Notes: generated from the sequence alone by a model not told the origin. A stretch of DNA of 64,000 bases from IMGVR_UViG_3300044712_001937:62001-126000; one strand, 5' to 3'. Numbered from the stretch's first letter, positions 41,136 to 58,790 are shown. Program-made: numbers and translations.

Positions 41136-41143
41136 AAAATAAA

Positions 41144-41174
41144 TTTGTATTTATAAAAAAAATAATTACATTTG
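41144..41174 (+). promoter_or_regulatory. Bacteroidota sigma-A promoter of tRNA cluster 1
   Basis: TTTG 41144-41147, 19 nt, TACATTTG 41167-41174. Confidence 0.75.
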
Positions 41175-41206
41175 TACCGAATAAGTATAACATAATAAAT
41201 ATTCAA

Positions 41207-41281
41207 ATGAAAAATTTAATACATATCCACCCCCAACCACAACAACATCCACAAATGTTGAATGGGGATAATATGGCTTAA
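41207..41281 (+). CDS. Attenuator leader peptide 1, MKNLIHIHPQPQQHPQMLNGDNMA (His/Pro/Gln-rich)
   Basis: Manual translation; lies between promoter and terminator; contains antiterminator segment TTGAATGGG. Confidence 0.8.
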   Translation: MKNLIHIHPQPQQHPQMLNGDNMA

Positions 41282-41313
41282 ATTTTTTAAAAAAGTTTTT
41301 AAGTTTAACATAT

Positions 41314-41348
41314 AAAAACCCATTCAGAGAAATTTGAATGGGTTTTTT
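41314..41348 (+). terminator. Conditional terminator of attenuator 1
   Basis: AAAAACCCATTCA-GAGAAATT-TGAATGGGTTTTTT. Confidence 0.85.
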
Positions 41349-41375
41349 ATTTTCAGGGATTGGGCGAGTTTAATA

Positions 41376-41386
41376 TGTTCTTTGAA
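41376..41386 (+). promoter_or_regulatory. boxA-like antitermination site
   Basis: TGTTCTTTGAA shortly after the terminator. Confidence 0.55.
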
Positions 41387-41464
41387 TTATCGAAATTGAG
41401 GTTATTTTTTTTATGTTAACTTAATTAATTTCGACATTAATTGTATTTATAATGAAAAATATAT

Positions 41465-42103
41465 ATGAATATTGAAAATTTAAAATTAATAATTGAAAAC
41501 AGTACTTCATTAAGTGAAGTTTGTAAGAAAATGAATATAAATAATAATGGTAACTCATTTAAAAAAATAAAAAAATTTATAAATGATGAAAGTATATCAA
41601 TATCTCATTTTAAGCGAAAATCAAAAAATATTTATAATGTTGATAAATTAAAATTATTAGTAAAAAATTCTACAACATATTCTGAAATATGTAGAGGGTT
41701 TAATATTAAAGAAACTGGTGGAAATATTAAAACAATTAAACAAAAAATTAATGAATCTAATATAGATATATCACATTTTAATGGTAAAGGTTGGAATAAA
41801 GGGAAAAGATATATTAATAATTTTAAAAAAAGTGAATTAAACAAAATATTAGTTGAAAATTCAACATATATTAATACGCATAAACTTAAATTAAGATTAA
41901 TTAAAGAAGGCTTACTTGAGCATAAATGCTATGGAGATAACTGTTGTATTATCAATATGTGGAATAATAAATTAATATCATTACAATTAGACCATATTAA
42001 TGGAAATAGAAGAGATAATAGAATTGAAAATCTTAGATTATTATGTCCTAATTGTCATTCACAAACTGAAACATATGGAGGTAAAAATAACGTAAAAAAA
42101 TAA
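41465..42103 (+). CDS. HNH homing endonuclease inserted ahead of tRNA cluster 1
   Basis: LQLDHINGNRRDNRIENLRLLCPNCHSQTETY; duplicated N-terminal repeat; late motif 41443-41451. Confidence 0.9.
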   Translation: MNIENLKLIIENSTSLSEVCKKMNINNNGNSFKKIKKFINDESISISHFKRKSKNIYNVDKLKLLVKNSTTYSEICRGFNIKETGGNIKTIKQKINESNIDISHFNGKGWNKGKRYINNFKKSELNKILVENSTYINTHKLKLRLIKEGLLEHKCYGDNCCIINMWNNKLISLQLDHINGNRRDNRIENLRLLCPNCHSQTETYGGKNNVKK

Positions 42104-42110
42104 TATATTT

Positions 42111-42185
42111 CTGGGTGTTCCACAGATGGATATATGGGCGTGCCTTGGAAGCACGTGTTCGTGAGTTCGAATCTCACCACTCAGA
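42111..42185 (+). tRNA. tRNA-Pro(UGG)
   Basis: Acceptor CTGGGTG/CACTCAG; CGTGC-CTTGGAA-GCACG; TTCGAAT T-loop. Confidence 0.85.
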
Positions 42186-42200
42186 CTAAATTGTTTTAAT

Positions 42201-42273
42201 GGTGTTTGAAGCATTAAGGTGATGTGCTTGACTGTGAATCAAGAGAAAACGGGTCAGTACCGTTCTTACACCC
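42201..42273 (+). tRNA. tRNA-His(GUG), atypical T-loop
   Basis: CTTGA-CTGTGAA-TCAAG; acceptor has mismatches; T-loop GTCAGTA. Confidence 0.7.
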
Positions 42274-42332
42274 AAATTATCGGTTAATTAACCTATAAAA
42301 TATATTTATAGGCATTTTAAAAGATAAAATTA

Positions 42333-42407
42333 CGGAATGTTGAGGAATTGGTTTCCCTCGCCTACCTTGGACGTAGGAGCATGTCGGTTCGAGTCCGGTC
42401 ATTCCGA
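42333..42407 (+). tRNA. tRNA-Pro(UGG)
   Basis: CGGAATG/CATTCCG; CCTAC-CTTGGAC-GTAGG. Confidence 0.88.
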
Positions 42408-42416
42408 CTATTAAAT

Positions 42417-42492
42417 CGAGTAATTGGGGAGTTGGTCACCCCGCCACATTTGGGATGTGGAGAACTCGCAGGTTCGAATCCTGCTTACTCGA
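42417..42492 (+). tRNA. tRNA-Pro(UGG)
   Basis: CGAGTAA/TTACTCG; CCACA-TTTGGGA-TGTGG. Confidence 0.88.
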
Positions 42493-42494
42493 CT

Positions 42495-42567
42495 GTATTA
42501 GTGGACTGTTGGTAGTCCGTCAAGATTGTGGCTCTTGCTGACGGGGGTTCGATTCCCCTCTAATACC
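42495..42567 (+). tRNA. tRNA-His(GUG)
   Basis: GTATTAG/CTAATAC, C discriminator; CAAGA-TTGTGGC-TCTTG. Confidence 0.85.
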
Positions 42568-42573
42568 CTAAAT

Positions 42574-42657
42574 TGTCCTTTGGTGGAATTGGTTTAAACA
42601 CAACTGTCTTTGAAGCAGTAACCTTCGGGTTTGCAGGTTCGAGTCCTGCAAGGACAA
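42574..42657 (+). tRNA. tRNA with Gln(UUG) anticodon and long variable arm
   Basis: TGTCCTT/AAGGACA; ACTGT-CTTTGAA-GCAGT; variable arm ACC-TTCG-GGT. Confidence 0.85.
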
Positions 42658-42664
42658 CTAAAAT

Positions 42665-42736
42665 TACTCAATAGTGTAATGGCTACCACACAACACTTTG
42701 ACTGTTGTAATTCTGGTTCGAGTCCAGATTGAGTAA
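42665..42736 (+). tRNA. tRNA-Gln(UUG)
   Basis: TACTCAA/TTGAGTA; CAACA-CTTTGAC-TGTTG. Confidence 0.88.
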
Positions 42737-42776
42737 CAATTTAAATAAAATTGCGTATATTACTAAAAAAACAATT

Positions 42777-43198
42777 ATGAATTATAATCTTTTCCTTGAT
42801 GATGTAAGAGAACCTGATGAAGTATTTGGATATACTAATAATCAGCTATATTTAATAGGTTGGAAAATAGTTCGAAATTATGATGAATTCATTAAATGTA
42901 TTTCTGAAAATGGAATTCCTAATGCTATTAGTTTTGACCATGATTTAGGACATGAACATTATAAAATACAAACCAATATTAGCTATAATCAATTTAAAGA
43001 AAAAACTGGTTTTCATTGCGCAAAATGGTTGATTGATTATTGTATTGTATTGATAATAAATTAGAACTTCCAAACACTATTTTAATACATTCATGGAATA
43101 AAGTGGGTAGTGCAAACATTAAGTCGTTATTTGATACATATAATAAAGTAAAAAATATTAACACTCCTAACAATTATCCACCAATACCTTATTCTTAA
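42777..43198 (+). pseudogene. Cyclic-phosphate-processing receiver-like protein, frameshifted by a TATTG x3 tract
   Basis: LFLDDVREP...ISFDHDLG...TGFHCAKWL; removing one TATTG unit (43038-43052) restores IDNKLELPNTILIHSWNKVGSANIKSLF. Confidence 0.7.
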
Positions 43199-43261
43199 GA
43201 ATAGAATAAATTCATATCGGATTTTTATAATATTTATTGTATTTATTATAAATTTCTGATT

Positions 43262-43756
43262 ATGGAATATAAAAATAATAAACAAAAACTTTTTGAAGTT
43301 ATCGCAAGACTTGATAAAACATTCAAACCTAAATTGAATGAAAGTAATGATAAATCAAACAAAAAGGGATTCCATACCAATATTGAAGAAGATACTATTA
43401 ATAATAATAACTTTAGAAAAGTATTATATACTGGTCAAAATTTACAATTAGTTTTAATGGCTTTAAAACCCGGTGAAGAAATTGGTGAAGAAACTCATCC
43501 AAATATTGACCAATTTTTTAGAATTGATGCTGGTAATGGTAAATGTATTATTAATGATAATGAATATAATTTAAAAAATGGTGATTGTATTATAGTTCCC
43601 GCAGGTTCTAAACATAATATAATTAATAATGGTAAGAAAGAATTAAAATTATATACCATATATTCACCTCCACATCATAAAGATGGTATTATCTTTAAAA
43701 CCAAAGACGAAGCTGAAAATAGTAAAGAAAAATTTAATGGTAAAACAACAGAATAA
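43262..43756 (+). CDS. Cupin-domain protein with KQKLFEV leader
   Basis: LKPGEEIGEETHPNIDQFFRIDAG...IVPAGSKHNIIN...LYTIYSPPHH; late motif 43239-43247. Confidence 0.85.
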   Translation: MEYKNNKQKLFEVIARLDKTFKPKLNESNDKSNKKGFHTNIEEDTINNNNFRKVLYTGQNLQLVLMALKPGEEIGEETHPNIDQFFRIDAGNGKCIINDNEYNLKNGDCIIVPAGSKHNIINNGKKELKLYTIYSPPHHKDGIIFKTKDEAENSKEKFNGKTTE

Positions 43757-43784
43757 ATAATATTAAAAATAATAAATTAGCAAT

Positions 43785-44057
43785 ATGAAAGACAGTAAAC
43801 AAAGATTATTTGAAGTAATGGGAAGACTTGATAAAACTTTTAAACCCAAAAATGTTCTTAATGAATGGAATTTCGATAAGAAAAAAGATGATGATTCTGA
43901 AGAAGAAAAAAAAGAAGGTGAAGAAACTCAAGAACATGAAGAATCTGAAACACCTGCTGAAGAAAAAAAAGAACATAAAGAAGATAAAGAATTAGACGAA
44001 GCTGATGAAGTAAAACCTAAAATCCCTGTAAATGCTATTGCAAAGGTGGGTAAATAA
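43785..44057 (+). CDS. Small acidic protein with KQRLFEVMG leader
   Basis: MKDSKQRLFEVMGRLDKTFKPKNVLNE followed by an E/K/D-rich tail. Confidence 0.65.
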   Translation: MKDSKQRLFEVMGRLDKTFKPKNVLNEWNFDKKKDDDSEEEKKEGEETQEHEESETPAEEKKEHKEDKELDEADEVKPKIPVNAIAKVGK

Positions 44058-44085
44058 ATTTTTTTTAAAAAAAAGTTAAAAATAA

Positions 44086-44123
44086 TTTGTTTTTAATTGA
44101 AACTTTTTTACCTTTGTATCGTA
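44086..44123 (+). promoter_or_regulatory. Overlapping sigma-A and ECF-type promoters of tRNA cluster 2
   Basis: TTTG 44086-44089 + TACCTTTG 44109-44116; TGAAAC 44098-44103 + N16 + CGTA 44120-44123. Confidence 0.75.
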
Positions 44124-44159
44124 TTTAGTTTAAAACGCTATAACAATTAAAAAATAGAA

Positions 44160-44252
44160 ATGATGAAAAAAGTACTCGACATATTAGTAGCAGAAACATT
44201 AGTTGCCTTATTATGGGCAGTTGATGAAGATATGCTATGTTCAGTCGGGTAA
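44160..44252 (+). CDS. Attenuator leader peptide 2, MMKKVLDILVAETLVALLWAVDEDMLCSVG (V/L/A/D/E/W-rich)
   Basis: Manual translation; 3' end GTTCAGTCGGGT is a perfect 12-nt complement of the terminator 5' arm. Confidence 0.82.
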   Translation: MMKKVLDILVAETLVALLWAVDEDMLCSVG

Positions 44253-44280
44253 GTTTTATTACGATATAAAACAAGTTTTT

Positions 44281-44318
44281 AAAAAAACCCGACTGAACTA
44301 AAATCAGTCGGGTTTTTT
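44281..44318 (+). terminator. Conditional terminator of attenuator 2
   Basis: A7-CCCGACTGA-ACTAAAA-TCAGTCGGG-T6. Confidence 0.9.
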
Positions 44319-44325
44319 GTTTTTA

Positions 44326-44338
44326 TGTTCTTTGACAT
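44326..44338 (+). promoter_or_regulatory. boxA-like antitermination site
   Basis: TGTTCTTTGACAT between the terminator and the first tRNA. Confidence 0.65.
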
Positions 44339-44349
44339 GCTGGAATTTT

Positions 44350-44422
44350 CGAGGTCGTGGTGTAATGGTCTGCATAACACACTGTCACTGTGTCGGTTGG
44401 GGTTCGAGTCCCCCGGTCTCGG
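44350..44422 (+). tRNA. tRNA-Asp(GUC)
   Basis: CGAGGTC/GGTCTCG; ACACA-CTGTCAC-TGTGT; G discriminator. Confidence 0.85.
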
Positions 44423-44486
44423 CAATATCCTATCGGAAGGTAGGAGAAACTAAATTATTTAAATCCGGAATAGAATAATTTAGAAA

Positions 44487-44561
44487 GGACGTATAGTTTA
44501 TATGGGTGTGAATGCCACCGAGATGGGGTGGTGGTTGCTGGTTCAAATCCAGTTACGTCTG
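44487..44561 (+). tRNA. Atypical tRNA, nominal Ile(GAU), noncanonical anticodon loop
   Basis: GGACGTA/TACGTCT; CCACC-GAGATGG-GGTGG (no U33). Confidence 0.55.
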
Positions 44562-44567
44562 CAAAAT

Positions 44568-44643
44568 ATCACCATAGGGGAGTCTGGTCGTCCCTGCTTG
44601 CCTGTCACGCAAGAGAACACGGGTTCAAATCCCGTTGGTGGTG
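44568..44643 (+). tRNA. tRNA-Asp(GUC)
   Basis: ATCACCA/TGGTGGT; CTTGC-CTGTCAC-GCAAG. Confidence 0.85.
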
Positions 44644-44790
44644 CTAATACTTTACTGTCGAATTATATTAAGTTGATATAATTTATGAAGATAAGCGGAT
44701 TGGTGTAATAAACACATCTACCTTAAATAAGTAGAAACCTGTAACATGTGAAAGTTATCATCCGCAACAAGAAAGTAAAGTATTTATTAT

Positions 44791-44874
44791 CGTGCATTAT
44801 GCAAGCGGTCAAAGCGGCAAGTCCTTCAAACTTGTATCGAAAGATTTCGAGGGGTTCGAATCCCCCATGCATGA
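44791..44874 (+). tRNA. tRNA with Glu(UUC) anticodon and long variable arm
   Basis: CGTGCAT/ATGCATG; CAAGT-CCTTCAA-ACTTG (C33); variable arm ATC-GAAA-GAT. Confidence 0.75.
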
Positions 44875-45141
44875 CTTTAGTTATTTTCATTCAAAAGTGT
44901 AATACAATGCACTTTTGAATGAAAACACAATCATTAGTATCATATATGAGACTTTCAACAATAAATGTTGAATATTTCTATAAAATTTTAAGTTATTGTG
45001 GAAAATATACAACAAATTGAATAAAAGTTATTTATTTTCTACAATATATAATGTATGAAATAACCAACATTAGTAAAACGATGAAATTATATTCTAAACT
45101 AATAACCACTTAGCTTATAAGCATATTTTAAAAATTACGTA

Positions 45142-45426
45142 ATGTGTGAAATAACAAACATTATTTATATGGAAAACGAAATTTTAAAAAAAGAAATCCT
45201 TAAACTCCGGGAAGAAAATGAAGACCTTAAAAGTAAATTAATTGATTTAACTTTTGAACAAAATTATAGCATTGAAAAAGAATTAGCTGAAATTGTTCGA
45301 GAATTATATTCTGGTGTTTGTGAAGAATTAAAAAATAAAAAAAGTGAACTTACTAAAAAACAAATTTTAGAAAATATTAGAAATAATCTACAAGAATTTG
45401 CAAAAAACTATAAGTTTAAATTATAA
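45142..45426 (+). CDS. Hypothetical coiled-coil protein
   Basis: 94-aa ORF; probable start at MENEIL. Confidence 0.55.
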   Translation: MCEITNIIYMENEILKKEILKLREENEDLKSKLIDLTFEQNYSIEKELAEIVRELYSGVCEELKNKKSELTKKQILENIRNNLQEFAKNYKFKL

Positions 45427-45430
45427 AAAT

Positions 45431-45502
45431 GCTCGGTTGGTAAAGTGGCTAATACGTCTGACTTTCTATCAGGAGTCACGGGTTCGATTCCCGTACCGAG
45501 TA
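45431..45502 (+). tRNA. tRNA-Glu(UUC)
   Basis: GCTCGGT/ACCGAGT; TCTGA-CTTTCTA-TCAGG. Confidence 0.85.
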
Positions 45503-45576
45503 CAATTAGGTGTCTAAAGCATTAAAGACTTAAATTCGGTAAAAAGTTAAATAATTAAGCCATGCCTAATTAAATC

Positions 45577-45648
45577 AGTCTCTTAGCGTAGCGGAAGCGC
45601 ATCTGCCTTACATGCAGAGGGTCATAGGTTCGAATCCTATAGGGACTA
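45577..45648 (+). tRNA. tRNA-Val(UAC)
   Basis: AGTCTCT/AGGGACT; TCTGC-CTTACAT-GCAGA. Confidence 0.88.
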
Positions 45649-45766
45649 CAAATGTCTATCATAGCTGGGTAAAATCCCTTAAAGGAATACTGGAGTAACG
45701 ATAACCTAAGTGAAGTGGTATTATGCGAGATAGTTATAATGAAAAGTTGGTCACTCAGTAATTATA

Positions 45767-45841
45767 GGGTGAAAATGGTGTAAGTATGGGAGCACATCTG
45801 CATGAAAGCAGCAGGACGAAGTTCGAATCTTTAACACTCCA
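45767..45841 (+). pseudogene. Degenerate tRNA-like element
   Basis: D-like and TTCGAAT arms present, but 6-nt anticodon loop (ATGAAA) and poor acceptor pairing. Confidence 0.5.
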
Positions 45842-45846
45842 CAAAT

Positions 45847-45931
45847 TGGAAAATGGTGTAATGGCTAAACATCCCACTCTTACAAAGTGGAGACGAGAAG
45901 TATAATCCGAGTTCGAATCTCGGTTTTCCAA
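45847..45931 (+). tRNA. tRNA with Val(UAC) anticodon and long variable region
   Basis: TGGAAAA/TTTTCCA; CCACT-CTTACAA-AGTGG; 16-nt variable region. Confidence 0.8.
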
Positions 45932-45939
45932 CATAAAAT

Positions 45940-46020
45940 GTCCTCTTGGTGGAACGGTAGACACGATAGTTTTAGAAACTATTGCTGAAAGGTGTGAGAG
46001 TTCAAGTCTCTCAGAGGATA
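45940..46020 (+). tRNA. tRNA-Leu(UAG)
   Basis: GTCCTCT/AGAGGAT; ATAGT-TTTAGAA-ACTAT; class II arm. Confidence 0.88.
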
Positions 46021-46066
46021 CTAATATTTTATAATAATTAAAATAAACTTAATTCTTGCAAAAACA

Positions 46067-46732
46067 CTATTTATTTTTTATTATGTTAACAATAACGTTT
46101 AAATATTTTTTTGATGTTTGTTCTTTGAAATATTTTTGTTGTGATGTGTCAATAATGCATAATTCAATCCCTTGTTCTAAACAAGCTTGAAATTTTCTAT
46201 TATCATTATTTTGAATTTGTTGAAGTTTATTTTCGCCAAATATTGGTTCATAATGAAATAAACCATTTAACTCAAAAGCAAGTTTAAGTGAAGGAATATA
46301 AATATCTAATTCAGAATTTATTATATCTTTATTATTAAATAATATTTCTAAATCAGGATATAATAATTTTAATTGTCCTTCAAGATAAATTTCAAGTTTA
46401 GACCTACGATTACCTTTTGTTTTATGTGTATTATTATAAATTGCAGCACATGATTGTGAACAAAAATGATTGTTTGATTTTTTTATTTCACTATTAGGTT
46501 TTATAATTTCAATACCACAATTAATACAAGTAAAAATTGTACTATTATTGAAATATAGTGAACGACATTTTTTTGTACAAAAATTACCACGATTATATTT
46601 ATTTTCTTTTATATAATGTTTTATTCTCTTTTTTTGACATTGGAAAATATTATCACAATAGTGACATTTTAAATTCAAAAAATCATTTGATTTAGCTGTA
46701 TTAAATTCTTCTTTGGTAAATAATGGAATCAT
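46067..46732 (-). CDS. Zinc-finger plus PD-(D/E)XK/Vsr-like endonuclease inserted antisense in tRNA cluster 2 (start revised to MIPLFT)
   Basis: CxxC repeats; ELDIYIPSLKLAFELNGLFHY; late motif on the minus strand at 46755-46747. Confidence 0.75.
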   Translation of the reverse strand: MIPLFTKEEFNTAKSNDFLNLKCHYCDNIFQCQKKRIKHYIKENKYNRGNFCTKKCRSLYFNNSTIFTCINCGIEIIKPNSEIKKSNNHFCSQSCAAIYNNTHKTKGNRRSKLEIYLEGQLKLLYPDLEILFNNKDIINSELDIYIPSLKLAFELNGLFHYEPIFGENKLQQIQNNDNRKFQACLEQGIELCIIDTSQQKYFKEQTSKKYLNVIVNIIKNK

Positions 46733-46820
46733 AAGACTTAATTTATAATAAATACTATAAATTTTCATTTTCGATATAGTTTTTCGGGACAAAGTAAAAG
46801 AATTAATTAATAATATATAT

Positions 46821-46907
46821 GGCTTTGTGGCGAAATTGGCAGTACGCAACAGACTTAAAATCTGTGGTTCAGTAATGGACGTGTCGGTTCAAGTCCGACC
46901 AGAGCTA
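46821..46907 (+). tRNA. tRNA-Leu(UAA)
   Basis: GGCTTTG/CAGAGCT; ACAGA-CTTAAAA-TCTGT. Confidence 0.9.
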
Positions 46908-46975
46908 CGCTATTGAGTTTTACACTTTTAGATTTCCGTGAAGTTAGTTAATAACTGAGAAAGAAAAAGTGATAT

Positions 46976-47051
46976 GGGGTATGGGACTGCTAGGGTTGGT
47001 CATCTCGCTTGCACCGAGAAAATCAGGACGATTCGAATTCGTCATGCTCCA
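46976..47051 (+). tRNA. tRNA-Ala(UGC)
   Basis: GGGGTAT/ATGCTCC with G3:U70; TCTCG-CTTGCAC-CGAGA. Confidence 0.88.
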
Positions 47052-47112
47052 CTGAGACAGACTGTTAGAATTTTATAGAACCTGTTGCTGGGTAGCGTAA
47101 AAATTCGAATAT

Positions 47113-47187
47113 GGTTCTGTAGCCCAATTGGTAGAGGCATCAGATTTAAATTCTGTATAGGTGTGGGTTCGACTCCCACCATCCCTA
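47113..47187 (+). pseudogene. tRNA-like gene, nominal Leu(UAA), mismatched acceptor stem
   Basis: Good D and T arms, CAGA-TTTAAAT-TCTG; GGTTCTG does not pair well with CATCCCT. Confidence 0.55.
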
Positions 47188-47194
47188 CTAACAT

Positions 47195-47265
47195 ACATCT
47201 GTCGTCTAATGGTAAGATATCGGTTTCCAACTCCGAGGATAAGGTTTCGATTACTTTCAGGTGTG
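47195..47265 (+). tRNA. tRNA-Trp(CCA)
   Basis: ACATCTG/CAGGTGT, G discriminator; loop TTCCAAC. Confidence 0.75.
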
Positions 47266-47283
47266 CTAATTAATTATAAATAT

Positions 47284-47550
47284 ATGAGTAGTGAAGATGG
47301 TAGGTATCATATAACTGATATCAAAACAGGTAGAAAATTTTTAGTTGAACCAATTGGTAATCCCCATGTTAATTGGGGTGATGTAAACCCTGCAACAAAA
47401 AAATTAGAAGGGGATTATGGTGATAAATATCGAGGTTCAATCGATGAAAAAAATTCAATAATTACTGAACAAAATGGATTTAAAAATATTATTGTAGGAG
47501 AAATTGGTGAATCTCCAGTAGATTTGATGAATAAAATTTTAAATTCTTAA
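47284..47550 (+). CDS. Conserved phage hypothetical protein (start revised to MSSEDG)
   Basis: The upstream part of the track ORF overlaps tRNAs; ATG at 47284. Confidence 0.65.
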   Translation: MSSEDGRYHITDIKTGRKFLVEPIGNPHVNWGDVNPATKKLEGDYGDKYRGSIDEKNSIITEQNGFKNIIVGEIGESPVDLMNKILNS

Positions 47551-47652
47551 ATTGCCGAATATTACCGGATATTGCCGGAATAAAATAAATTAATACTGAA
47601 TATCAAGTATTTATATTTTTATTTTATTACCGGATATTACCGGAATAAAATA
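47551..47652. repeat. Five 10-bp ATTRCCG(G/A)A(T/A) repeats in two blocks
   Basis: Units at 47551, 47561, 47571, 47626, 47636; each block ends TAAAATA. Confidence 0.8.
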
Positions 47653-47730
47653 TTGCTTATTTTGGGTTGACGATAGTAAGTTCCAAACATTTAGGAATGA
47701 TATGAGGGTTCATTCATAAGCGCATCTAAT

Positions 47731-47813
47731 ACGTCCGTGACCGAGTGGTTAAAGGTGATAGTCTCCAAAACTATTTGCGAAAGCATACGTGGGTTCAAAT
47801 CCTACCGGGCGTG
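47731..47813 (+). tRNA. tRNA with Trp(CCA) anticodon and long variable arm
   Basis: ACGTCCG/CGGGCGT; ATAGT-CTCCAAA-ACTAT; arm TGC-GAAA-GCA. Confidence 0.85.
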
Positions 47814-47875
47814 CTTTAATTTATTAAAAATCAATAACTTATGAAAACGCAAAAAGCAATGAGCACCCTATTAGG

Positions 47876-48335
47876 GTGCAATTAACAAGACAAGAACGAA
47901 GAAGAAATAAACATAGTGATGAATTTAATTTAATTTTCAAAATTTTTTTTTCAATCATATCGTTATAAAATACTTGATTTTTCAGGTGTTGACATTAAAA
48001 CTTTATTATCTTTAAATCATGAAGATTCTAAAGTTTGTTTTAAAAAATTTGATAATGGAGAATATTCGAAGGATGAAATATATTTTCAAGGTATTCCAAC
48101 CAGACATCCAAATATTCTTAAATCAATAATTATATCAAAAAAATCTTGGGGTTTACATGTTAAAATGTGGAGTGATGGTATTTATGAAGGTTGTTTCACT
48201 AAAAAAGAAATTTTAGAACAATTTTATGATAAAAATATTATTATACCTAATAGTTTTTTATTAGATTTAGATAATCAAATTATAAAAAAATTTAAGAATT
48301 ATGGCATCACAAAACAAATTAAAAAAGATGATTAA
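47876..48335 (+). pseudogene. Hypothetical ORF broken at a T9 homopolymer
   Basis: GTG-QLTRQERRR frame joins the QSYRYKILDFSG...KKDD frame if one T is removed at 47943-47951. Confidence 0.45.
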
Positions 48336-48486
48336 TAGTTATTGTTGGAGTAGTTTAAAAAATACTGTACAAGAAATGAAATTAAAACGTGTACTTTTTT
48401 ATACTGCAAATGATAGAAAAATGAATAAAAAGGTAGATTGTAACAACATTGATTAAAATTCGTATTTATAAACAAAACTTATATTT

Positions 48487-48921
48487 ATGAAAAAAACTAT
48501 TTTAAGTATTATTTTATCGTTAATATCTATTCTTGGATATACACAAGAAGTATCAGGTCAATTTACTAAATTGAATGAATCGTATTATCAAAATAATTTC
48601 GCAAATCAGATTAAAGGAAAAACTGAAGTTATTTTAGATGATAAAGCTCGTGTAGATATTGTTACGGATACTTTTGCAATTGAAGTTGATTTTGCTGAAA
48701 AATGGGCAGAATCTATAGGACAATCTCAATATTATGCGAGAAAATTAAATAAAAAAGCTGGTATATTATTAGTTATAAATCCTGCAACTGATGATAAATA
48801 TTTAAAACGTCTAATCATTACTACAATTTATGAAAATGTAACTGTTTGGTTATGGGATTATACAACAGATAAATGGTGTAAAGTTCAAACTAAAATTGAA
48901 TATTCATATAAATTTCAATAA
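48487..48921 (+). CDS. Signal-peptide-bearing PD-(D/E)XK-like protein
   Basis: Signal peptide; ARVDIVTDTFAIEVDFAEKWAESIGQSQYY. Confidence 0.6.
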   Translation: MKKTILSIILSLISILGYTQEVSGQFTKLNESYYQNNFANQIKGKTEVILDDKARVDIVTDTFAIEVDFAEKWAESIGQSQYYARKLNKKAGILLVINPATDDKYLKRLIITTIYENVTVWLWDYTTDKWCKVQTKIEYSYKFQ

Positions 48922-48959
48922 TTCTTGATAATTTCAATTTTAAAATATAAATTTGCCTA

Positions 48960-49697
48960 ATGTTAATATTGACAAGAAAAAAAGATTATTATGATGGTGT
49001 TGCTGGTTCAACTGGCATTGATAAAACCATTGTATATGAACGAGAAGAAAAGGAACTTACAAATAAAGAAGTTCCAATGTTTTTCGTACATGGAAGTCAT
49101 TCTTGGCAAAAAAATAGAGATTCTGCTTTTATTAATTTCAGATATCATAATTTAAAAAAAGAATTTCAGAAAAAATATCCATTAATGAATTATTTTATTA
49201 TTGGATTTTGTGGGAAACTTTATGTGGGTTGGAAACTTTACTATGAAATTCCACAAGGTTTCTCAATTCCTAATAAATTAATTACTGAAATTACATTTGA
49301 TGAAAGTTATATTACATCAATGATTGACGATAAAAGCGGATGGCGTGGTAAGTTTTCAGATAATTTAAATGAGATTAAAAATTACGATGCTTTAGATATA
49401 TTTAGAAAATATCACACTCCAATATTTGTATTTGATTCGGATTACGATGTTACATACATTTCAAATAATGGAAAATATAGAAACATGAATTCCAAATTCT
49501 TCATAAATCCAACTCTAAATAAATATGAATTTTATAAAATATTTGATTCATTTCAAGCATTTCAAGAAATTCAAATGTTTATGAGTGGTGTGTTAGGTTC
49601 TAATGAAAAAAATATTGTTGAAGTTGAAGATAAATACAAGATTACACAATATGGATTTGATAAATGGAGCTTTAGAAAAGAACCAAGTAAAAAATAA
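48960..49697 (+). CDS. Conserved phage hypothetical protein
   Basis: KKDYYD...FYKIFDSFQAFQEIQMFMSGVL...KITQYGFDKWSFRK; TAAATTTG promoter element upstream. Confidence 0.65.
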   Translation: MLILTRKKDYYDGVAGSTGIDKTIVYEREEKELTNKEVPMFFVHGSHSWQKNRDSAFINFRYHNLKKEFQKKYPLMNYFIIGFCGKLYVGWKLYYEIPQGFSIPNKLITEITFDESYITSMIDDKSGWRGKFSDNLNEIKNYDALDIFRKYHTPIFVFDSDYDVTYISNNGKYRNMNSKFFINPTLNKYEFYKIFDSFQAFQEIQMFMSGVLGSNEKNIVEVEDKYKITQYGFDKWSFRKEPSKK

Positions 49698-49700
49698 ATA

Positions 49701-49976
49701 ATGAATATGGAAGTTAAAAAAATATTAATAATACCTGCCAGATTTGTTGAAAAAACTGAAGAAGGTAAATATATTATTGATGTTTTATTACAAAATAAGC
49801 ATAAATCTATAACTGAAAGGAGATTGTTTGATGAATATTCTCTTAAAGGTATTGATAATCCTAATTTATTATTTATTGGTATTTTAACTGGAGTTGGTGT
49901 TATGCAATGTAATTTCATGGATGCTAATGACTATGAAGATTTATTTAAGAAAAAATGGAATGTATTATTAAAATAA
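49701..49976 (+). CDS. Hypothetical protein
   Basis: 91-aa ORF. Confidence 0.55.
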   Translation: MNMEVKKILIIPARFVEKTEEGKYIIDVLLQNKHKSITERRLFDEYSLKGIDNPNLLFIGILTGVGVMQCNFMDANDYEDLFKKKWNVLLK

Positions 49977-49991
49977 GTTCTTTAACATAAT

Positions 49992-50350
49992 GGGGGTGAC
50001 TGGCTTTGATTTCAGGTAGGGCGGTAACGTAAGCAAGTAGTAGTTGAATCGGACTACTCTAAAAAGGTTCAAAACAATAAATGCAGAAGACATTATGTCT
50101 ATTCCAACTTCCTTGACAAAAGGAAAAAGCGTATTCGCACAGAGTGCTGAACTTGCAATAGCAGCTTAAGGAAACAATAAACGGCAAAAGCATGTAAACA
50201 TGTGAGGTTTGAGATACCTTTAAATAATCACTCTGGTTTTTTTGTTTTCCATAATAACTTAATATTTTGTTGATTTAGAAAAATCAAATAAACTTGTAGA
50301 AAGCTTATTAAACACAGGAAAGACGAGGGGTTCGATACCCTCCACCTCCA
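49992..50350 (+). ncRNA. ssrA: tmRNA with tag (A)AEDIMSIPTSLTKGKSVFAQSAELAIAA
   Basis: 5' GGGGGTGACTGG pairs with 3' CACCTCCA; T-arm GGTTCGATACCC; internal ORF 50083-50169 ending LAIAA-stop. Confidence 0.93.
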
Positions 50351-50396
50351 CAAACTTTTTTCTATCTCCATAGTATTTATATGAAAATGTAATACT

Positions 50397-51638: not shown

Positions 51639-51724
51639 GGCGAAGTGATGGAACTGGTAGACATGCAGGACTTAAAATCCTGTGGTCAGTAATGACCGTG
51701 TGGGTTCGACTCCCATCTTCGCTA
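51639..51724 (+). tRNA. tRNA-Leu(UAA)
   Basis: GGCGAAG/CTTCGCT; CAGGA-CTTAAAA-TCCTG. Confidence 0.92.
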
Positions 51725-52021
51725 CAAATAAAATTTTAATAGTATTTATGAAAAATAAATTATCTGAACCACCAAAACCTCCTTTATGTAGGATAATAAG
51801 AGAAGGATGTACTCATTTTTGTAATAAATGTCATTCATCGACACCAAGAAGATGGGTTTTGATTGGTAAAAGATATTGTTTAAATCCTGATTGTCAAAAT
51901 TCATATGGCTATAAAGAAAAAGAGTAATAATGATTGTGGATGTGGTAAACCAGTTAAAGTTACTGACTCAAGTAATAAAAAAAGTAATTTTAAAAAAATT
52001 ATACCAAAAAAATGAAAAAAT

Positions 52022-52102
52022 GTTCTCGTGATGGAATGGTAGACTTGGCAGTTTCAAAAATTGTTGCTGAAAAGCGTGTGGGTTCGAGTCCCACCGGGAA
52101 TA
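52022..52102 (+). tRNA. tRNA-Leu(CAA)
   Basis: GTTCTCG/CGGGAAT; loop TTCAAAA; class II arm. Confidence 0.82.
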
Positions 52103-52185
52103 CAAAAATAAAATTTATTATTCTCAGTAAAGAAGAAGTTGAGAATGATAGAAGTAAAGCTTATAAATATTTAATTTAAATTTTT

Positions 52186-52428
52186 ATGAAAATTCACTAT
52201 AATCCATACGTTAATAATGATGAAGAAGATTATCCTGAATTTGCTTTATGTGGAACATTAATGCCTCAAGATGGTGGAAATGAAACTAATGATGAAAAAT
52301 TTGTGACATGTAAAAAATGTTTAAAATCAATAAAAAAAATTAATAATTGGAGAGATGAAACTGAAAAATATATATTAAATGATATGCAAGGTTTCGTTGA
52401 TTTTCAAAATAAAAATAATTTAATATGA
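52186..52428 (+). CDS. Small zinc-binding protein
   Basis: ALCG...VTCKKC. Confidence 0.55.
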   Translation: MKIHYNPYVNNDEEDYPEFALCGTLMPQDGGNETNDEKFVTCKKCLKSIKKINNWRDETEKYILNDMQGFVDFQNKNNLI

Positions 52429-52477
52429 AAAAAATCTTTGAATTCTTGTAGGTACGCTCTAATGCGACCACAAGAAT

Positions 52478-52780: not shown

Positions 52781-52784
52781 ACAT

Positions 52785-52855
52785 TGCGATATCGTCTAAT
52801 GGTAGGACACCTCTCTCATAAGGAGTGAATTGCAGTTCGATTCTGCATATCGCAA
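52785..52855 (+). tRNA. tRNA-Met/Ile2(CAU)
   Basis: TGCGATA/TATCGCA; loop CTCATAA. Confidence 0.82.
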
Positions 52856-52879
52856 CAACATTCCAGCATGTTAAAACAA

Positions 52880-57490: not shown

Positions 57491-57533
57491 TGTAACTTTT
57501 TTTTGGAAGTCTCGTATTTATATCATATATTTG
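57491..57533 (+). promoter_or_regulatory. Overlapping ECF-type and sigma-A promoters of tRNA cluster 3
   Basis: TGTAAC 57491-57496 + N16 + CGTA 57513-57516; TTTG 57502-57505 + TATATTTG 57526-57533. Confidence 0.75.
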
Positions 57534-57619
57534 CAGAGTGAATTTAATGAATTCTGTATTTGACTGTTTTGAATGGCGAGGGTCATTAAATTTAATAACA
57601 AAATAAACAATATAAAGAA

Positions 57620-57709
57620 ATGAGAACATTTGGTACATATTATTACGGTAAAAAATCCTATAAACACCTTATAGGATTCGGGAATTCTATGTCCAAAATG
57701 CAAAGATAA
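57620..57709 (+). CDS. Attenuator leader peptide 3, MRTFGTYYYGKKSYKHLIGFGNSMSKMQR (Tyr/Lys-rich)
   Basis: Manual translation; contains GGATTCGGG complementary to the terminator 5' arm and an 8-bp protector hairpin. Confidence 0.8.
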   Translation: MRTFGTYYYGKKSYKHLIGFGNSMSKMQR

Positions 57710-57736
57710 CAGCAATGATTTTTGCGTAATGAACTG

Positions 57737-57766
57737 AAACCCGAATTCGAAAGATTCGGGTTTTTT
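57737..57766 (+). terminator. Conditional terminator of attenuator 3
   Basis: AAACCCGAAT-TCGAAAG-ATTCGGG-T6. Confidence 0.88.
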
Positions 57767-57780
57767 GTTTTTATATAAAT

Positions 57781-57863
57781 TGTGTAGATGGTAAATTGGC
57801 TAAATCAGAGGCTTGTAACACCTTCGTCATTCGACTATGTAGGTTCGATTCCTACCTGCACAA
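57781..57863 (+). tRNA. tRNA-Tyr(GUA)
   Basis: TGTGTAG/CTGCACA; loop TTGTAAC; class II arm. Confidence 0.8.
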
Positions 57864-57870
57864 CAAATTT

Positions 57871-57943
57871 GACTTCGTGGCGCAATTGGTAGCGCAATAG
57901 GCTTTTAACCTATGGGTTGGGGATTCGACTTCCCCCGGAGTCA
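57871..57943 (+). tRNA. tRNA-Lys(UUU)
   Basis: GACTTCG/CGGAGTC; ATAGG-CTTTTAA-CCTAT. Confidence 0.88.
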
Positions 57944-58003
57944 CGGTAGGAAGACTGTTATAATTTCATAGTTCCAAGTAATGGAAAGCATAGAAATTAA
58001 ATT

Positions 58004-58087
58004 GGGAGTGCGCTAACGCTGGAGAGTTAGGTTTGTCTGTAAAACAAATGTCTTTCGGCTGAGTGGGTTCGAATCCCACTACTCCCA
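58004..58087 (+). tRNA. tRNA-Tyr(GUA)
   Basis: GGGAGTG/TACTCCC; TTTGT-CTGTAAA-ACAAA. Confidence 0.88.
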
Positions 58088-58153
58088 CAAATTTAATATT
58101 AAAATAGGTGTATTATACCTATGTTTAATAGTATTTATATTAAATTTAATATT

Positions 58154-58549
58154 ATGTTTGAAAATTGTAAAAATTCAAAAAAACAAGGTGATTTAGGATT
58201 AGGAAAAGCAATTGGATGGTTAACAGAATGTGGTTATACTGTTTCTATACCATTAACTGATTCACAAGATTATGATTTGATTGTTGATATGGATAATAAA
58301 TTAAATAAAGTTCAAGTTAAAACAACCAGATATAAAAATAAAAATGGAATTTTTTGTGTTAATTTATCAGTTAAAGGAGGCAATCAAAGTAGTAATACAA
58401 TAAAAAAATTTGATGCTAATTTTACTGATTATGTTTATGTTTATACATCGAATAATGAAATGTATTTTATTCCGTCATGTGAAATAAAAACAAAAAATAA
58501 TTTAAATATTGGTAAATTATTTTCAAAATATAAAATAATGACTTCGTAA
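58154..58549 (+). CDS. PD-(D/E)XK homing-endonuclease-like protein within tRNA cluster 3 (start revised)
   Basis: KKQGDLG...PLTDSQDYDLIVD...KVQVKT; GTATTTATA at 58131-58139. Confidence 0.82.
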   Translation: MFENCKNSKKQGDLGLGKAIGWLTECGYTVSIPLTDSQDYDLIVDMDNKLNKVQVKTTRYKNKNGIFCVNLSVKGGNQSSNTIKKFDANFTDYVYVYTSNNEMYFIPSCEIKTKNNLNIGKLFSKYKIMTS

Positions 58550-58612
58550 CTTAATTGGTAGAGTACCACTCTCTTAAAGTGGGAGTTGTGGGTTCAAATC
58601 CCACCGAAGTCA
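58540..58612 (+). tRNA. tRNA-Lys(CUU)
   Basis: GACTTCG/CGAAGTC; CCACT-CTCTTAA-AGTGG. Confidence 0.9.
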
Positions 58613-58696
58613 CTAACTGAACTTAGCAAATGGAGTTCTGTCAACCATCAAGCATGATTAAATCGTAGGAGGGGGAGAGTTTAAAATTTGCAATAT

Positions 58697-58783
58697 GACC
58701 TTGTAGCTCAACTGGATAGAGCTTCTGGCTTTTAACCAGAAGGGAGCGTAATGCCGTTGTGGGTTCGAGTCCCACCGGGGTCA
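58697..58783 (+). tRNA. tRNA with Lys(UUU) anticodon and long variable arm
   Basis: GACCTTG/CGGGGTC; TCTGG-CTTTTAA-CCAGA; 18-nt variable region. Confidence 0.85.
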
Positions 58784-58790
58784 CAAAATT

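What the first reader, a model, noticed from the sequence alone, without database searches (positions are those of the whole stretch)
41376..49988. rrn-like boxA sites placed after the attenuators and before tmRNA
TGTTCTTTGAA (41376), TGTTCTTTGACAT (44326) and AGTTCTTTAACAT (about 49977) resemble bacterial rrn boxA (E. coli TGCTCTTTAACA). Inference: once RNA polymerase passes the attenuator it recruits NusB/NusE antitermination to traverse kilobases of untranslated, hairpin-rich tRNA array, mimicking host rRNA operons. No clear boxA was seen after attenuator 3.
Basis: partly seen in the sequence, partly recalled or inferred. Interest (0 to 1): 0.6.

Follow-up and report, generated by a model that had tools for sequence, protein, structure and literature searches.

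The report
Host-type boxA sites on phage tRNA operons
A 365 kb phage of a Bacteroidota host places copies of its host's ribosomal-RNA "boxA" signal just after the attenuators of its tRNA arrays, before its tmRNA and before its own CRISPR array, most likely so that host polymerase can finish these long untranslated transcripts.

Summary
They are real boxA elements, but of the Bacteroidota type rather than the E. coli type.

- **Exact host match.** The 18-mer at 44326 (TGTTCTTTGACATGCTGG) recurs exactly outside the window, after a fourth attenuator. It is also identical to the 16S-23S spacer boxA of a Bacteroidota rrn operon. It differs at 2-3 of 18 positions from the two closest Bacteroidales spacer boxAs fetched (4-6 from the other three).
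- **Independent scan.** A weight matrix built only from ten Bacteroidales rrn boxAs puts its four best hits in the 365 kb genome before the tmRNA, before two tRNA arrays, and before a phage CRISPR array.
- **Conservation.** In 25 related phage loci chosen through a neighbouring protein, matrix hits lie 26:2 on the tRNA strand. The order terminator, boxA, tRNA-Asp recurs in 11 of them.
- **Host signature.** Phage genes carry Bacteroidota TAnnTTTG promoters and almost no Shine-Dalgarno sites. I found no phage NusB, S10, NusG or RNA polymerase.

Best reading: host NusB/S10 bind the boxA and make the polymerase termination-resistant across untranslated RNA. Binding and activity are untested. The site at 41376 is weaker, the one at 46119 is doubtful, and attenuator 3 has none. 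This is a new deployment of a known mechanism.

The parts
41140..41174 (+). Two Bacteroidota-type -7 promoter boxes (TAAATTTG at 41140, TACATTTG at 41167) upstream of attenuator 1
   Evidence: Pattern listing. TAnnTTTG is enriched 7-fold at -30 to -40 from phage start codons.
41207..41281 (+). Leader peptide ORF 1 (24 aa, contains HIHPQPQQHPQ). The array downstream encodes tRNA-Pro x3, His and Gln x2.
41314..41352 (+). Attenuator 1 terminator hairpin with T-run. Its 5' arm can instead pair with the 3' end of the leader ORF.
   Evidence: folds (-18.0 kcal/mol for both the terminator and the alternative).
41376..41395 (+). boxA site 1, TGTTCTTTGAATTATCGAAA.
   Evidence: 12.3 bits, rank 17 genome-wide. 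The homologous Pro/His/Gln attenuator in relative L017 is also followed by TGTTCTTTCGTATAATGG.
41465..42103 (+). HNH endonuclease ORF lying between boxA 1 and tRNA array 1
   Evidence: Pfam HNH_3 and HNH.
42111..42737 (+). tRNA array 1 (Pro, Pro, Pro, His, Gln, Gln, plus one extra Rfam tRNA hit at 42202)
44109..44116 (+). Promoter -7 box TACCTTTG, with TTTG about 23 nt upstream, for attenuator 2
44160..44252 (+). Leader peptide ORF 2 (30 aa, rich in V, L, D, E, A, W). The array downstream encodes Asp, Glu, Val, Leu, Ala and Trp tRNAs.
   Evidence: A homologous leader is present in L017.
44282..44318 (+). Attenuator 2 terminator. The alternative pairing uses the leader ORF end, including its stop codon.
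   Evidence: -20.7 kcal/mol for the terminator; the pre-terminator segment that contains the alternative pairing folds at -28.7.
44326..44343 (+). boxA site 2, TGTTCTTTGACATGCTGG, 6-7 nt before tRNA-Asp
   Evidence: 18.5 bits, joint second genome-wide. The exact 18-mer occurs in a Bacteroidota rrn spacer (L118) and in 15 phage tRNA-array contigs. The order terminator, boxA, tRNA-Asp is conserved in 11 of the 25 relatives.
44350..47814 (+). tRNA array 2 (3.5 kb, 11 ARAGORN tRNAs plus 2 further Rfam hits), interrupted by a minus-strand ORF
46119..46131 (+). Weak internal boxA-like site TGTTCTTTGAAAT. It follows tRNA-Leu(tag) and lies inside the 3' end of minus-strand ORF 46067-46849. It may be chance or a remnant.
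   Evidence: 8.9 bits. In relatives L005 and L015 an exact boxA also follows tRNA-Leu(tag).
48948..48955 (+). Promoter -7 box TAAATTTG for ORFs 48960-49697 and 49701-49976, which run into the tmRNA gene
49976..49993 (+). boxA site 3, AGTTCTTTAACATAATGG. It starts on the last base of the stop codon of ORF 49701-49976 and ends 2 nt into the tmRNA.
   Evidence: 20.2 bits, best hit in the genome. The same arrangement is seen in related phages and in some Bacteroidales ssrA genes, where a TAnnTTTG promoter lies upstream.
49992..50353 (+). Phage tmRNA gene
   Evidence: ARAGORN; Rfam RF00023, 81.9 bits.
57526..57764 (+). Attenuator 3, which has no boxA: promoter TATATTTG at 57526, leader ORF 57620-57709 (contains TYYYGKKSYK), terminator 57736-57764
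   Evidence: The homologous Tyr/Lys attenuators in L003 and L010 also lack a boxA.
57781..58784 (+). tRNA array 3 (Tyr, Lys, Tyr, Lys, Lys; 1 kb), containing a PD-(D/E)XK endonuclease ORF

Best explanation
The motifs are genuine rrn-type boxA elements of the phage's Bacteroidota host, copied into the phage's stable-RNA operons.

Proposed sequence of events:
1. Host RNA polymerase starts at a TAnnTTTG promoter.
2. It reads a short leader ORF whose codons match the tRNAs encoded downstream.
3. It either stops at the attenuator terminator or reads through.
4. If it reads through, the next RNA made is the boxA, with core GTTCTTTGACATGYTGG.
5. Host NusB-S10 bind this RNA and, with NusG and NusA, convert the polymerase into an rrn-like antitermination complex.
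6. That complex resists Rho, and hairpin-induced pausing, across 0.6-7 kb of untranslated, highly structured tRNA.

The same signal sits at the boundary between translated and untranslated RNA before the tmRNA. It also sits about 12 nt into the transcript of the phage's own CRISPR array.

Placing the boxA after rather than before the terminator keeps the attenuator decision free of antitermination.

Shown here: sequence identity to host rrn boxA, position, strand, promoters and conservation. Inferred: Nus binding, Rho resistance and the reason for the placement.
For: 1. **Host rrn match.** Six Bacteroidales rrn operons carry AGTTCTTTGAAAATATTGAAG-type boxA about 100 nt before 16S. They carry AAGTTCTTTGACATATTGGAAG-type boxA just before 23S. 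The leader boxAs lie downstream of TAnnTTTG promoters. A Bacteroidota rrn spacer (L118; its 16S 3' end is 94% identical to a Bacteroidales 16S) holds the exact phage 18-mer.
2. **Independent scan.** A matrix from those ten host sites puts its top four hits in the phage genome before the tmRNA, two tRNA arrays and a CRISPR array.
3. **Conservation.** 15 of 16 exact 18-mer hits in IMG/VR lie in tRNA arrays of other phages. In 25 unique loci anchored on protein 48960-49697 (39-57% identity), hits of 13 bits or more are 26 on the + strand and 2 on the - strand. Fifteen of them lie within 30 nt of a tRNA or tmRNA. The flanks and the terminator stems vary.
4. **Same motif before other untranslated host RNAs.** It precedes a Spirosoma CRISPR array (L039). 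At least 8 of 30 Bacteroidales ssrA leaders read by eye carry such a motif; a strict pattern scores 5 of 30, one of them about 65 nt upstream. It also lies in a 250 nt mRNA leader. boxA before CRISPR arrays and suhB is known (PMC13753749).
5. **Host polymerase.** TAnnTTTG occurs 23 times against 3.2 expected at -30 from start codons. Shine-Dalgarno-like sites precede only 16 of 391 ORFs. No phage NusB, S10, NusG, Rpb2-like or T7-like polymerase was detected. B. thetaiotaomicron has NusB, S10 and NusG.
6. **Published function.** The rrn complex blocks Rho and interferes with intrinsic termination (PMC13753749, PMC12360218).
Against: - No RNA data exist. All five sequencing runs that hold this DNA are rhizosphere or other metagenome DNA. 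Transcript starts, read-through and polarity are therefore unobserved.
- Binding of NusB/S10 cannot be tested with these tools.
- The actual host species is unknown.
- The boxA keeps a nearly fixed distance (5-7 nt) to the next tRNA, and it abuts the tmRNA 5' end. Antitermination does not require this, so it may point to an added role in processing.
- Array 3 and the Leu/Leu/Met cluster (51639-52856) have no boxA.
- Site 41376 scores only 12 bits and is followed by a translated ORF.
- Highly diverged phage polymerases could escape the Pfam searches.
Confidence: 0.75

Rival explanations
1. The motif is DNA-level. It would be a -7-like promoter element (a TTCTTTG variant of TAnnTTTG) that starts transcription of tRNA and tmRNA genes just downstream, with the terminator upstream acting only as an insulator.
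For: - The TTTG core is followed 5-7 nt later by the tmRNA 5' end, in the phage and in host genome G015.
- Spacing to the tRNA 5' ends is constant at 5-7 nt.
- The motif sits directly after terminators.
Against: - In host rrn operons the same motif lies in the 16S-23S spacer, and in the 16S leader downstream of canonical promoters.
- Most host ssrA genes that have the motif carry a canonical TAnnTTTG 10-25 nt upstream of it; L221 and L228 show none within 75 nt.
- The phage CRISPR site has TATATTTG 17 nt upstream.
- All four attenuators have their own promoters.
- The motif lacks the conserved TA of the -7 box.
Confidence: 0.07
2. The motif is an RNA element bound by Nus factors or another host protein, but its main role is folding or processing of the precursor (a chaperone role as in rRNA maturation, or defining the RNase P or other cleavage context). 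Protection from termination would be secondary.
For: - Fixed short spacing to tRNA 5' ends, and direct abutment to the tmRNA 5' end in phages and hosts.
- The conserved extension CATGYTGG lies beyond the 8-12 nt boxA core.
- rrn antitermination complexes are known to aid rRNA folding (PMC10250234 and PMC8632103; titles and abstracts seen).
Against: - The same motif stands about 170 nt before the phage CRISPR array, 80 nt before an ORF (site 1), and about 100 nt before 16S. No tRNA-like 5' end is nearby in any of these cases.
- The two roles are not exclusive.
Confidence: 0.12
3. boxA acts negatively, as in E. coli suhB and Salmonella hisG. Bound NusB/S10 would promote Rho termination or block translation, for example limiting expression of the HNH endonuclease after site 1.
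For: - boxA can stimulate Rho-dependent termination depending on context (PMC12360218).
- Site 1 lies 80 nt before a translated ORF.
Against: - The strongest sites precede only untranslated RNA, whose production is the evident purpose of the operon.
- The context is the same as in rrn operons and CRISPR arrays, where boxA is positive.
Confidence: 0.04
4. The motifs are chance AT-rich matches with no function.
For: - Loose matches are not enriched.
- A Markov null yields 0.5 hits of 18 bits or more per genome.
Against: - The top four matrix hits all precede stable-RNA operons in sense orientation.
- Strand bias in independently anchored relatives is 26:2.
- The exact 18-mer is conserved across phages of 27-45% GC whose flanks have diverged.
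Confidence: 0.02

Closest known systems
rrn operon boxA / ribosomal antitermination complex (NusB-S10-NusG-NusA-SuhB-S4), E. coli and B. subtilis
   Same: The sequence class is shared: E. coli UGCUCUUUAACA and B. subtilis AUGAUCUUUGAAA (PMC13753749) against phage UGUUCUUUGACA and AGUUCUUUAACA. In all cases the element is single-stranded RNA placed early in a long untranslated transcript, often just after a hairpin. No phage-specific protein is needed. One Bacteroidota rrn spacer boxA is identical to the phage site over 18 nt.
   Different: Here it sits in a phage genome, before tRNA arrays, a tmRNA and a CRISPR array rather than rRNA. In this phage three of the sites sit directly downstream of a leader-peptide attenuator terminator, a fourth weak one lies inside array 2, and the tmRNA and CRISPR sites do not follow attenuators. 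A conserved 3' extension (CATGYTGG) abuts the next gene. Binding and activity are untested.
Lambdoid phage nut sites (boxA + boxB + N protein)
   Same: A phage uses host NusB/S10 through a boxA in its own transcripts to obtain processive antitermination.
   Different: There is no boxB hairpin downstream of the boxA, because the tRNA starts 5-7 nt later. I did not search for an N-like protein. The boxA is of the full rrn consensus type, not the weakened lambda type. It serves stable-RNA operons, not the early-to-late gene cascade.
boxA upstream of bacterial CRISPR arrays (cited in PMC13753749; the primary study is recalled from memory as Stringer et al. 2020 and was not read here)
   Same: boxA protects a long untranslated repeat array from Rho. 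The exact phage 18-mer precedes a Spirosoma CRISPR array (L039). A boxA also precedes the phage's own 6-repeat array at genome 218899.
   Different: That work concerns chromosomal arrays. Here the array is phage-borne, sits next to a 482 aa Cas12f1/TnpB-like gene, and carries the same signal as the phage's tRNA operons.
Leader-peptide attenuation of amino-acid operons (trp, his, leu, pheST)
   Same: The units just upstream of the boxAs have a promoter, a short ORF enriched in particular codons, and mutually exclusive antiterminator and terminator hairpins.
   Different: The regulated genes are tRNAs that read the leader's own codons. A boxA follows the terminator. The host phylum lacks Shine-Dalgarno-led initiation.

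Membership tests
rrn-type boxA (Nus-factor antitermination signal) | Sequence fits the boxA consensus (E. coli UGCUCUUUAACA; B. subtilis AUGAUCUUUGAAA) | tested here: met
   Sites 44326 and 49976 each differ from the E. coli 12-mer at 2 positions. The consensus sequences come from PMC13753749.
rrn-type boxA (Nus-factor antitermination signal) | Matches the boxA of the host clade's own rrn leader and 16S-23S spacer | tested here: met
   Ten Bacteroidales rrn boxAs were read. The exact 18-mer is in a Bacteroidota rrn spacer, L118. The host-derived matrix gives the phage sites 18.5-20.2 bits, against 15-27 bits for the host sites themselves. The host phylum is inferred, not proven.
rrn-type boxA (Nus-factor antitermination signal) | Lies on the transcribed strand, downstream of a promoter and upstream of long untranslated RNA | tested here: met
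   TAnnTTTG promoters lie upstream of every site. Strand bias in relatives is 26:2. Downstream lie 0.6-7 kb tRNA arrays, a tmRNA and a CRISPR array. Promoters are predicted from sequence only.
rrn-type boxA (Nus-factor antitermination signal) | Conserved in relatives while the flanks diverge | tested here: met
   The core GTTCTTTGACATGYTGG is kept while the terminator stems and the 3 nt before GTTC vary.
rrn-type boxA (Nus-factor antitermination signal) | NusB, S10 and NusG are available in the infected cell | tested here: inconclusive
   None was detected in the complete phage genome. All three are present in the Bacteroides thetaiotaomicron control (same calls). The real host is unidentified.
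rrn-type boxA (Nus-factor antitermination signal) | NusB-S10 binds the RNA | not testable with these tools
   No RNA-protein binding tool or data were available.
rrn-type boxA (Nus-factor antitermination signal) | The element confers read-through of Rho-dependent (or intrinsic) terminators | not testable with these tools
   No RNA runs hold this phage.
Lambda-type nut site | boxB hairpin a few nt downstream of boxA, bound by a phage N protein | tested here: not met
   A tRNA or tmRNA begins 0-7 nt after the extended boxA, which leaves no room for a boxB. Hairpins, where present, lie upstream. I did not search for an N-like protein.
Bacteroidota sigma-A promoter (-33 TTTG / -7 TAnnTTTG) | TA at the first two positions of the -7 box, and location upstream of the transcript start | tested here: not met
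   The motif reads GTTCTTTG with no TA. In host genomes it sits inside rrn spacers and downstream of canonical promoters.

The most novel reading that the evidence does not exclude
Huge phages of Bacteroidota build their tRNA genes into two-stage operons.
- **Stage one:** a leader-peptide attenuator senses shortage of exactly the tRNAs encoded downstream.
- **Stage two:** a host-identical boxA, placed after the terminator, locks the polymerases that pass into an rrn-like, Rho-resistant state.

On this reading the same boxA is a general mark for stable-RNA operons in Bacteroidota (rRNA, ssrA, CRISPR arrays). The phage would have taken it over for its tRNA arrays, tmRNA and its own type V CRISPR array. 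The conserved extension and fixed spacing could also couple antitermination to 5' processing.
Probability: 0.5. Interest if true: 0.8.

Novelty: new variant of a known kind. Interest (0 to 1): 0.62.

Why it matters
- **How large phages express stable RNA.** It shows how a very large phage can get kilobases of untranslated tRNA, a tmRNA and a CRISPR array transcribed by host polymerase. Such RNA would normally be a target for Rho in the host cell.
- **A host-prediction marker.** The phage boxA equals the host-clade rrn boxA, so the motif can be read from sequence as a cheap host marker.
- **boxA outside model bacteria.** It extends boxA/Nus antitermination, studied almost only in E. coli, lambda and recently Bacillus, to Bacteroidota and their phages. 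It suggests boxA marks several stable-RNA genes there.
- **A design rule.** Together with the attenuators, it implies a sensor first and a processivity switch second. This can be tested with simple reporters and would be useful for engineering long non-coding operons in Bacteroides.

Tried and rejected
- **Sigma-70 promoter reading of the TTGACA inside the motif.** The -10 element would fall inside the tRNA, and no TATAAT-like hexamer is present.
- **Bacteroidota -7 promoter reading.** I took this seriously because of the TTTG core and the spacing. I rejected it after reading host rrn, ssrA and phage CRISPR contexts.
- **Near-identity search of deposited phage genomes.** It found no relatives, only an HNH fragment and a tRNA-Asp piece.
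- **Literature search for the motif as a string.** It returned only unrelated primers and siRNAs. No paper linking phage tRNA arrays with attenuators or boxA was found in the library.
- **The 18-mer in genome contigs.** Most of the 36 hits are coding-sequence coincidences (a VFFDMLG-type peptide) in high-GC genomes. A 12-mer count in 61 Bacteroidales genomes is barely above its reversed control. Short-pattern counting is therefore uninformative, and rrn copies are mostly missing from MAGs.
- **Multi-copy hits in G008, G024 and G062.** They turned out to be a roughly 100 nt sRNA-like repeat and insertion-sequence ends, not rrn.
- **RNA evidence.** Only DNA metagenome runs hold the sequence, so I did not use read laying.
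- **TAG=Q reading near the CRISPR locus.** It changed almost nothing, so I claim no alternative code.
- **Complex prediction.** I did not use it because it cannot take RNA.

Full report
**Setting.** The window is bases 62001-126000 of a single 364,702-base virus record. The record has direct terminal repeats, is estimated complete and has 26% G+C. It carries 49 tRNA genes and one tmRNA gene. All five sequencing runs that hold the DNA are metagenome DNA (four rhizosphere, one unspecified), and no RNA run holds it. No close relative exists among deposited phage genomes.

**The observation.**
- Simple counting is not convincing. The 9-mer GTTCTTTRA occurs 6 times against 2.7 expected, and loose 13-mer matches are not enriched.
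- All four + strand 9-mer hits fall in the 41-50 kb stable-RNA region.
- The site at 44326 extends to an 18-mer, TGTTCTTTGACATGCTGG. It recurs exactly at genome 137414, after another terminator and 7 nt before tRNA-Cys.

**What surrounds the sites.**
- Each has a Bacteroidota-type promoter (TAnnTTTG).
- Each has a short ORF and a strong terminator hairpin with a T-run.
- In each, the last codons of the ORF can pair with the terminator's 5' arm as an alternative structure.
- Each leader peptide is enriched in the amino acids whose tRNAs follow:

| Attenuator | Leader peptide | tRNAs downstream |
|---|---|---|
| 1 (window 41207-41281) | contains HIHPQPQQHPQ | Pro, Pro, Pro, His, Gln, Gln |
| 2 (window 44160-44252) | rich in V, L, D, E, A, W | Asp, Glu, Val, Leu, Ala, Trp |
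| 3 (window 57620-57709) | contains TYYYGKKSYK | Tyr, Lys, Tyr, Lys, Lys |
| 4 (genome 137215-137340) | rich in S, T, I, R, N, G, F, C | the 7 kb array starting at 137439 |

boxA-like sites follow the terminators of attenuators 1, 2 and 4 by 7-28 nt. Attenuator 3 has none: its terminator ends 16 nt before tRNA-Tyr. The tmRNA site follows two translated ORFs, not an attenuator. It begins on the last base of the stop codon of ORF 49701-49976 and ends 2 nt into the tmRNA.

**Which host?** In the phage, TAnnTTTG is found 23 times in the -30 bin before start codons, against 3.2 expected. Only 16 of 391 ORFs have a Shine-Dalgarno-like sequence. Both are hallmarks of Bacteroidota (established knowledge). 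I detected no phage NusB, S10, NusG, Rpb2-like or T7-like polymerase. Transcription from these promoters is therefore by host polymerase with host factors.

I fetched six rrn operons from five Bacteroidales genomes.
- About 100 nt before 16S, downstream of one to three TAnnTTTG promoters, they carry AGTTCTTTGAAAATATTGAAG, AGTTCTTTAACAGATATGG or close variants.
- Just before 23S they carry AAGTTCTTTGACATATTG(A/G)AAG or AAGTTCATTGACATGTTGGCAA.
- These are the leader and spacer boxAs, and they resemble the phage sites well beyond the E. coli core.
- A metagenome contig (L118) with the end of a 16S gene, a spacer and a 23S gene holds the exact phage 18-mer in its spacer. Its 16S end is 94% identical to a Bacteroidales 16S.

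**An independent scan.** I built a 20-nt weight matrix from the ten host rrn sites only and scanned both strands of the phage genome.
- The top three hits are 49974 (20.2 bits), 44324 and genome 137412 (18.5 bits each).
- The fourth hit, at genome 218899 (17.4 bits), led to something I had not looked for. It lies 17 nt after a TATATTTG promoter. About 170 nt further on is a CRISPR array of six 36-nt repeats. Directly upstream is a 482 aa Cas12f1/TnpB-like ORF.
- boxA before CRISPR arrays is a known use of the element (PMC13753749).
- So the four best hits mark four untranslated RNA operons, all in sense orientation.
- A Markov null gives 0.5 hits of 18 bits or more per genome, against three observed. 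The positional coincidence is the stronger argument.
- Site 41374 scores 12.3 bits (rank 17) and site 46117 scores 8.9 bits.

**Conservation.**
- The exact 18-mer occurs in 16 IMG/VR contigs, and 15 of them are tRNA arrays of other phages with 34-40% G+C. In these, it lies about 7 nt before a tRNA or tRNA-like 5' end.
- In JGI metagenomes, about 30 of the 80 returned contigs are such arrays, and several place the motif directly after a terminator.
- To avoid circularity, I collected relatives through the protein encoded at 48960-49697, which gave 35 loci (25 unique) at 39-57% identity, several from 330-360 kb genomes.
- In those loci, the host-derived matrix gives 26 hits of 13 bits or more on the gene strand and 2 on the other strand. 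Fifteen lie within 30 nt of a tRNA or tmRNA. The order terminator, boxA, tRNA-Asp recurs in 11 of the 25 loci, with varying stems and flanks.
- tmRNA genes of relatives are mostly preceded by GTTC(T/A)TT(G/A/T)A variants at the same spacing.
- The whole module of promoter, homologous leader peptide, terminator and boxA is present in L017, L003, L010, L009 and L005.
- The Pro/His/Gln attenuator of L017 is followed by TGTTCTTTCGTATAATGG, which supports the weak site 1.
- The Tyr/Lys attenuators of L003 and L010 lack a boxA, as here.

**The same motif in Bacteroidota chromosomes.**
- The exact 18-mer precedes a CRISPR array in Spirosoma (L039).
- It lies in a 250 nt leader of an AAA-ATPase gene in Muribaculaceae and Prevotellaceae, after a TATATTTG promoter.
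- By eye, at least 8 of 30 sampled Bacteroidales ssrA genes carry a boxA-like motif just upstream of the tmRNA 5' end; a strict pattern finds 5, one of them about 65 nt upstream. Most have a canonical promoter upstream of the motif; L221 and L228 show none within 75 nt. The phage tmRNA leader copies this arrangement.

**Promoter or boxA?** The motif has a TTTG core and sits 5-7 nt before RNA 5' ends, so I considered a -7 promoter variant.
- Against this, it occurs inside rrn spacers.
- It lies downstream of canonical promoters in rrn leaders, most of the ssrA leaders that carry it and the phage CRISPR unit.
- It lacks the TA of the -7 box.
- The fixed spacing remains unexplained. It may reflect a second role in processing or common descent of the boxA-tRNA units.

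**Mechanism (inferred).** boxA RNA recruits NusB-S10. With NusG, NusA and accessory proteins this forms the rrn antitermination complex. [quoted passage not shown]
- Untranslated tRNA arrays, the tmRNA and a CRISPR array are the kind of RNA Rho would attack, and Bacteroidota have Rho (PMC12360218).
- No intrinsic terminator-like site was found on the + strand inside the arrays, so Rho is the likelier target.
- Putting the boxA after the attenuator terminator would leave the attenuation decision untouched by antitermination. This is my inference.
- The strongest boxAs head the longest untranslated units (3.5 kb and 7 kb) and the tmRNA. The 1 kb Tyr/Lys array has none.

**Verdict.** The element belongs to the boxA family by sequence, position, strand and conservation. 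Binding and activity are untested. It is not a lambda-type nut site.

The novelty lies in where the signal is used. An rrn-type boxA that needs no nut-type boxB is carried by a family of huge phages. It sits behind leader-peptide attenuators of tRNA operons, before a phage tmRNA, and before a phage CRISPR array. I found no description of this in the searchable literature.

Noticed in passing
window 41140-41352, 44109-44318, 57526-57764; genome 137164-137400 (L251:65-301): Four leader-peptide attenuators precede tRNA arrays. Each leader ORF is enriched in the amino acids whose tRNAs follow, and its 3' end pairs with the terminator's 5' arm. Homologous leaders occur in related phages (L017, L003, L010, L009, L005). 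This is probably the more remarkable feature of the region.
   Followed up: partly
genome 217417-219451 (L252:7418-9452; L250): A phage-borne compact type V-like CRISPR locus. It has a 482 aa Cas12f1/TnpB-like ORF (Pfam PF07282), then a TATATTTG promoter, a boxA, and six 36-nt repeats (GTTGTAAACAACC...ACTTACAAC) with 29-30 nt spacers. I found no other cas genes of 150 aa or more nearby.
   Followed up: partly
genome 219501-219596 (L250:802-897): A 96-nt tRNA-like element lies just after the CRISPR array. ARAGORN calls it tRNA-His(atg), and Rfam gives a weak tmRNA-like hit (31 bits, below the cut-off). A T-arm-like piece precedes it.
   Followed up: no
genome 148036-148110: A tRNA with anticodon CTA, a TAG suppressor that ARAGORN calls tRNA-Pyl. 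Reading TAG as Gln changed almost nothing in the one 18 kb stretch I tested, so no recoding is shown.
   Followed up: partly
window 42574-42658, 44791-44875, 45847-45932, 47731-47814, 57781-57864 and others: Many phage tRNAs for Gln, Glu, Val, Trp, Tyr and Lys are 84-88 nt long and sit beside normal 72-76 nt copies with the same anticodon. This suggests introns or long insertions in one copy of each pair. Rfam finds further tRNA-like genes at 42202, 44487 and 47113 that ARAGORN misses.
   Followed up: no
window 41465-42103 (+), 46067-46849 (-), 58121-58549 (+): ORFs with nuclease or zinc-finger domains are inserted in or next to the tRNA arrays: HNH, zf-FCS and PD-(D/E)XK. They look like homing-type mobile genes.
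   Followed up: partly
L034, L042, L045, L051 (Muribaculaceae/Prevotellaceae MAG contigs): The exact 18-mer lies in a conserved leader of about 250 nt before a 720-740 aa AAA-ATPase gene. An upstream stretch complementary to it (TGTCAAAGAACAGCA) could sequester the boxA in a long hairpin, which may be a regulated boxA.
   Followed up: no
L079-L081, L083 (genome G008); L108, L110, L113, L140, L148, L183: Two unidentified conserved non-coding units in bacteria or metagenomes start with the boxA motif. One is a multi-copy unit of about 100 nt ending in a terminator hairpin. The other is a unit beginning ...TTTCGATTAGGAGTTGCCAG. Neither has an Rfam match at gathering score.
   Followed up: no
L002, L005, L015 and similar, just after the 18-mer: In related phages the sequence after the boxA looks like a tRNA with a large insertion in the D-arm region (..GTAGCTCTAATTGGCGAGCC..GCGAGAGC..). 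ARAGORN does not call it.
   Followed up: no
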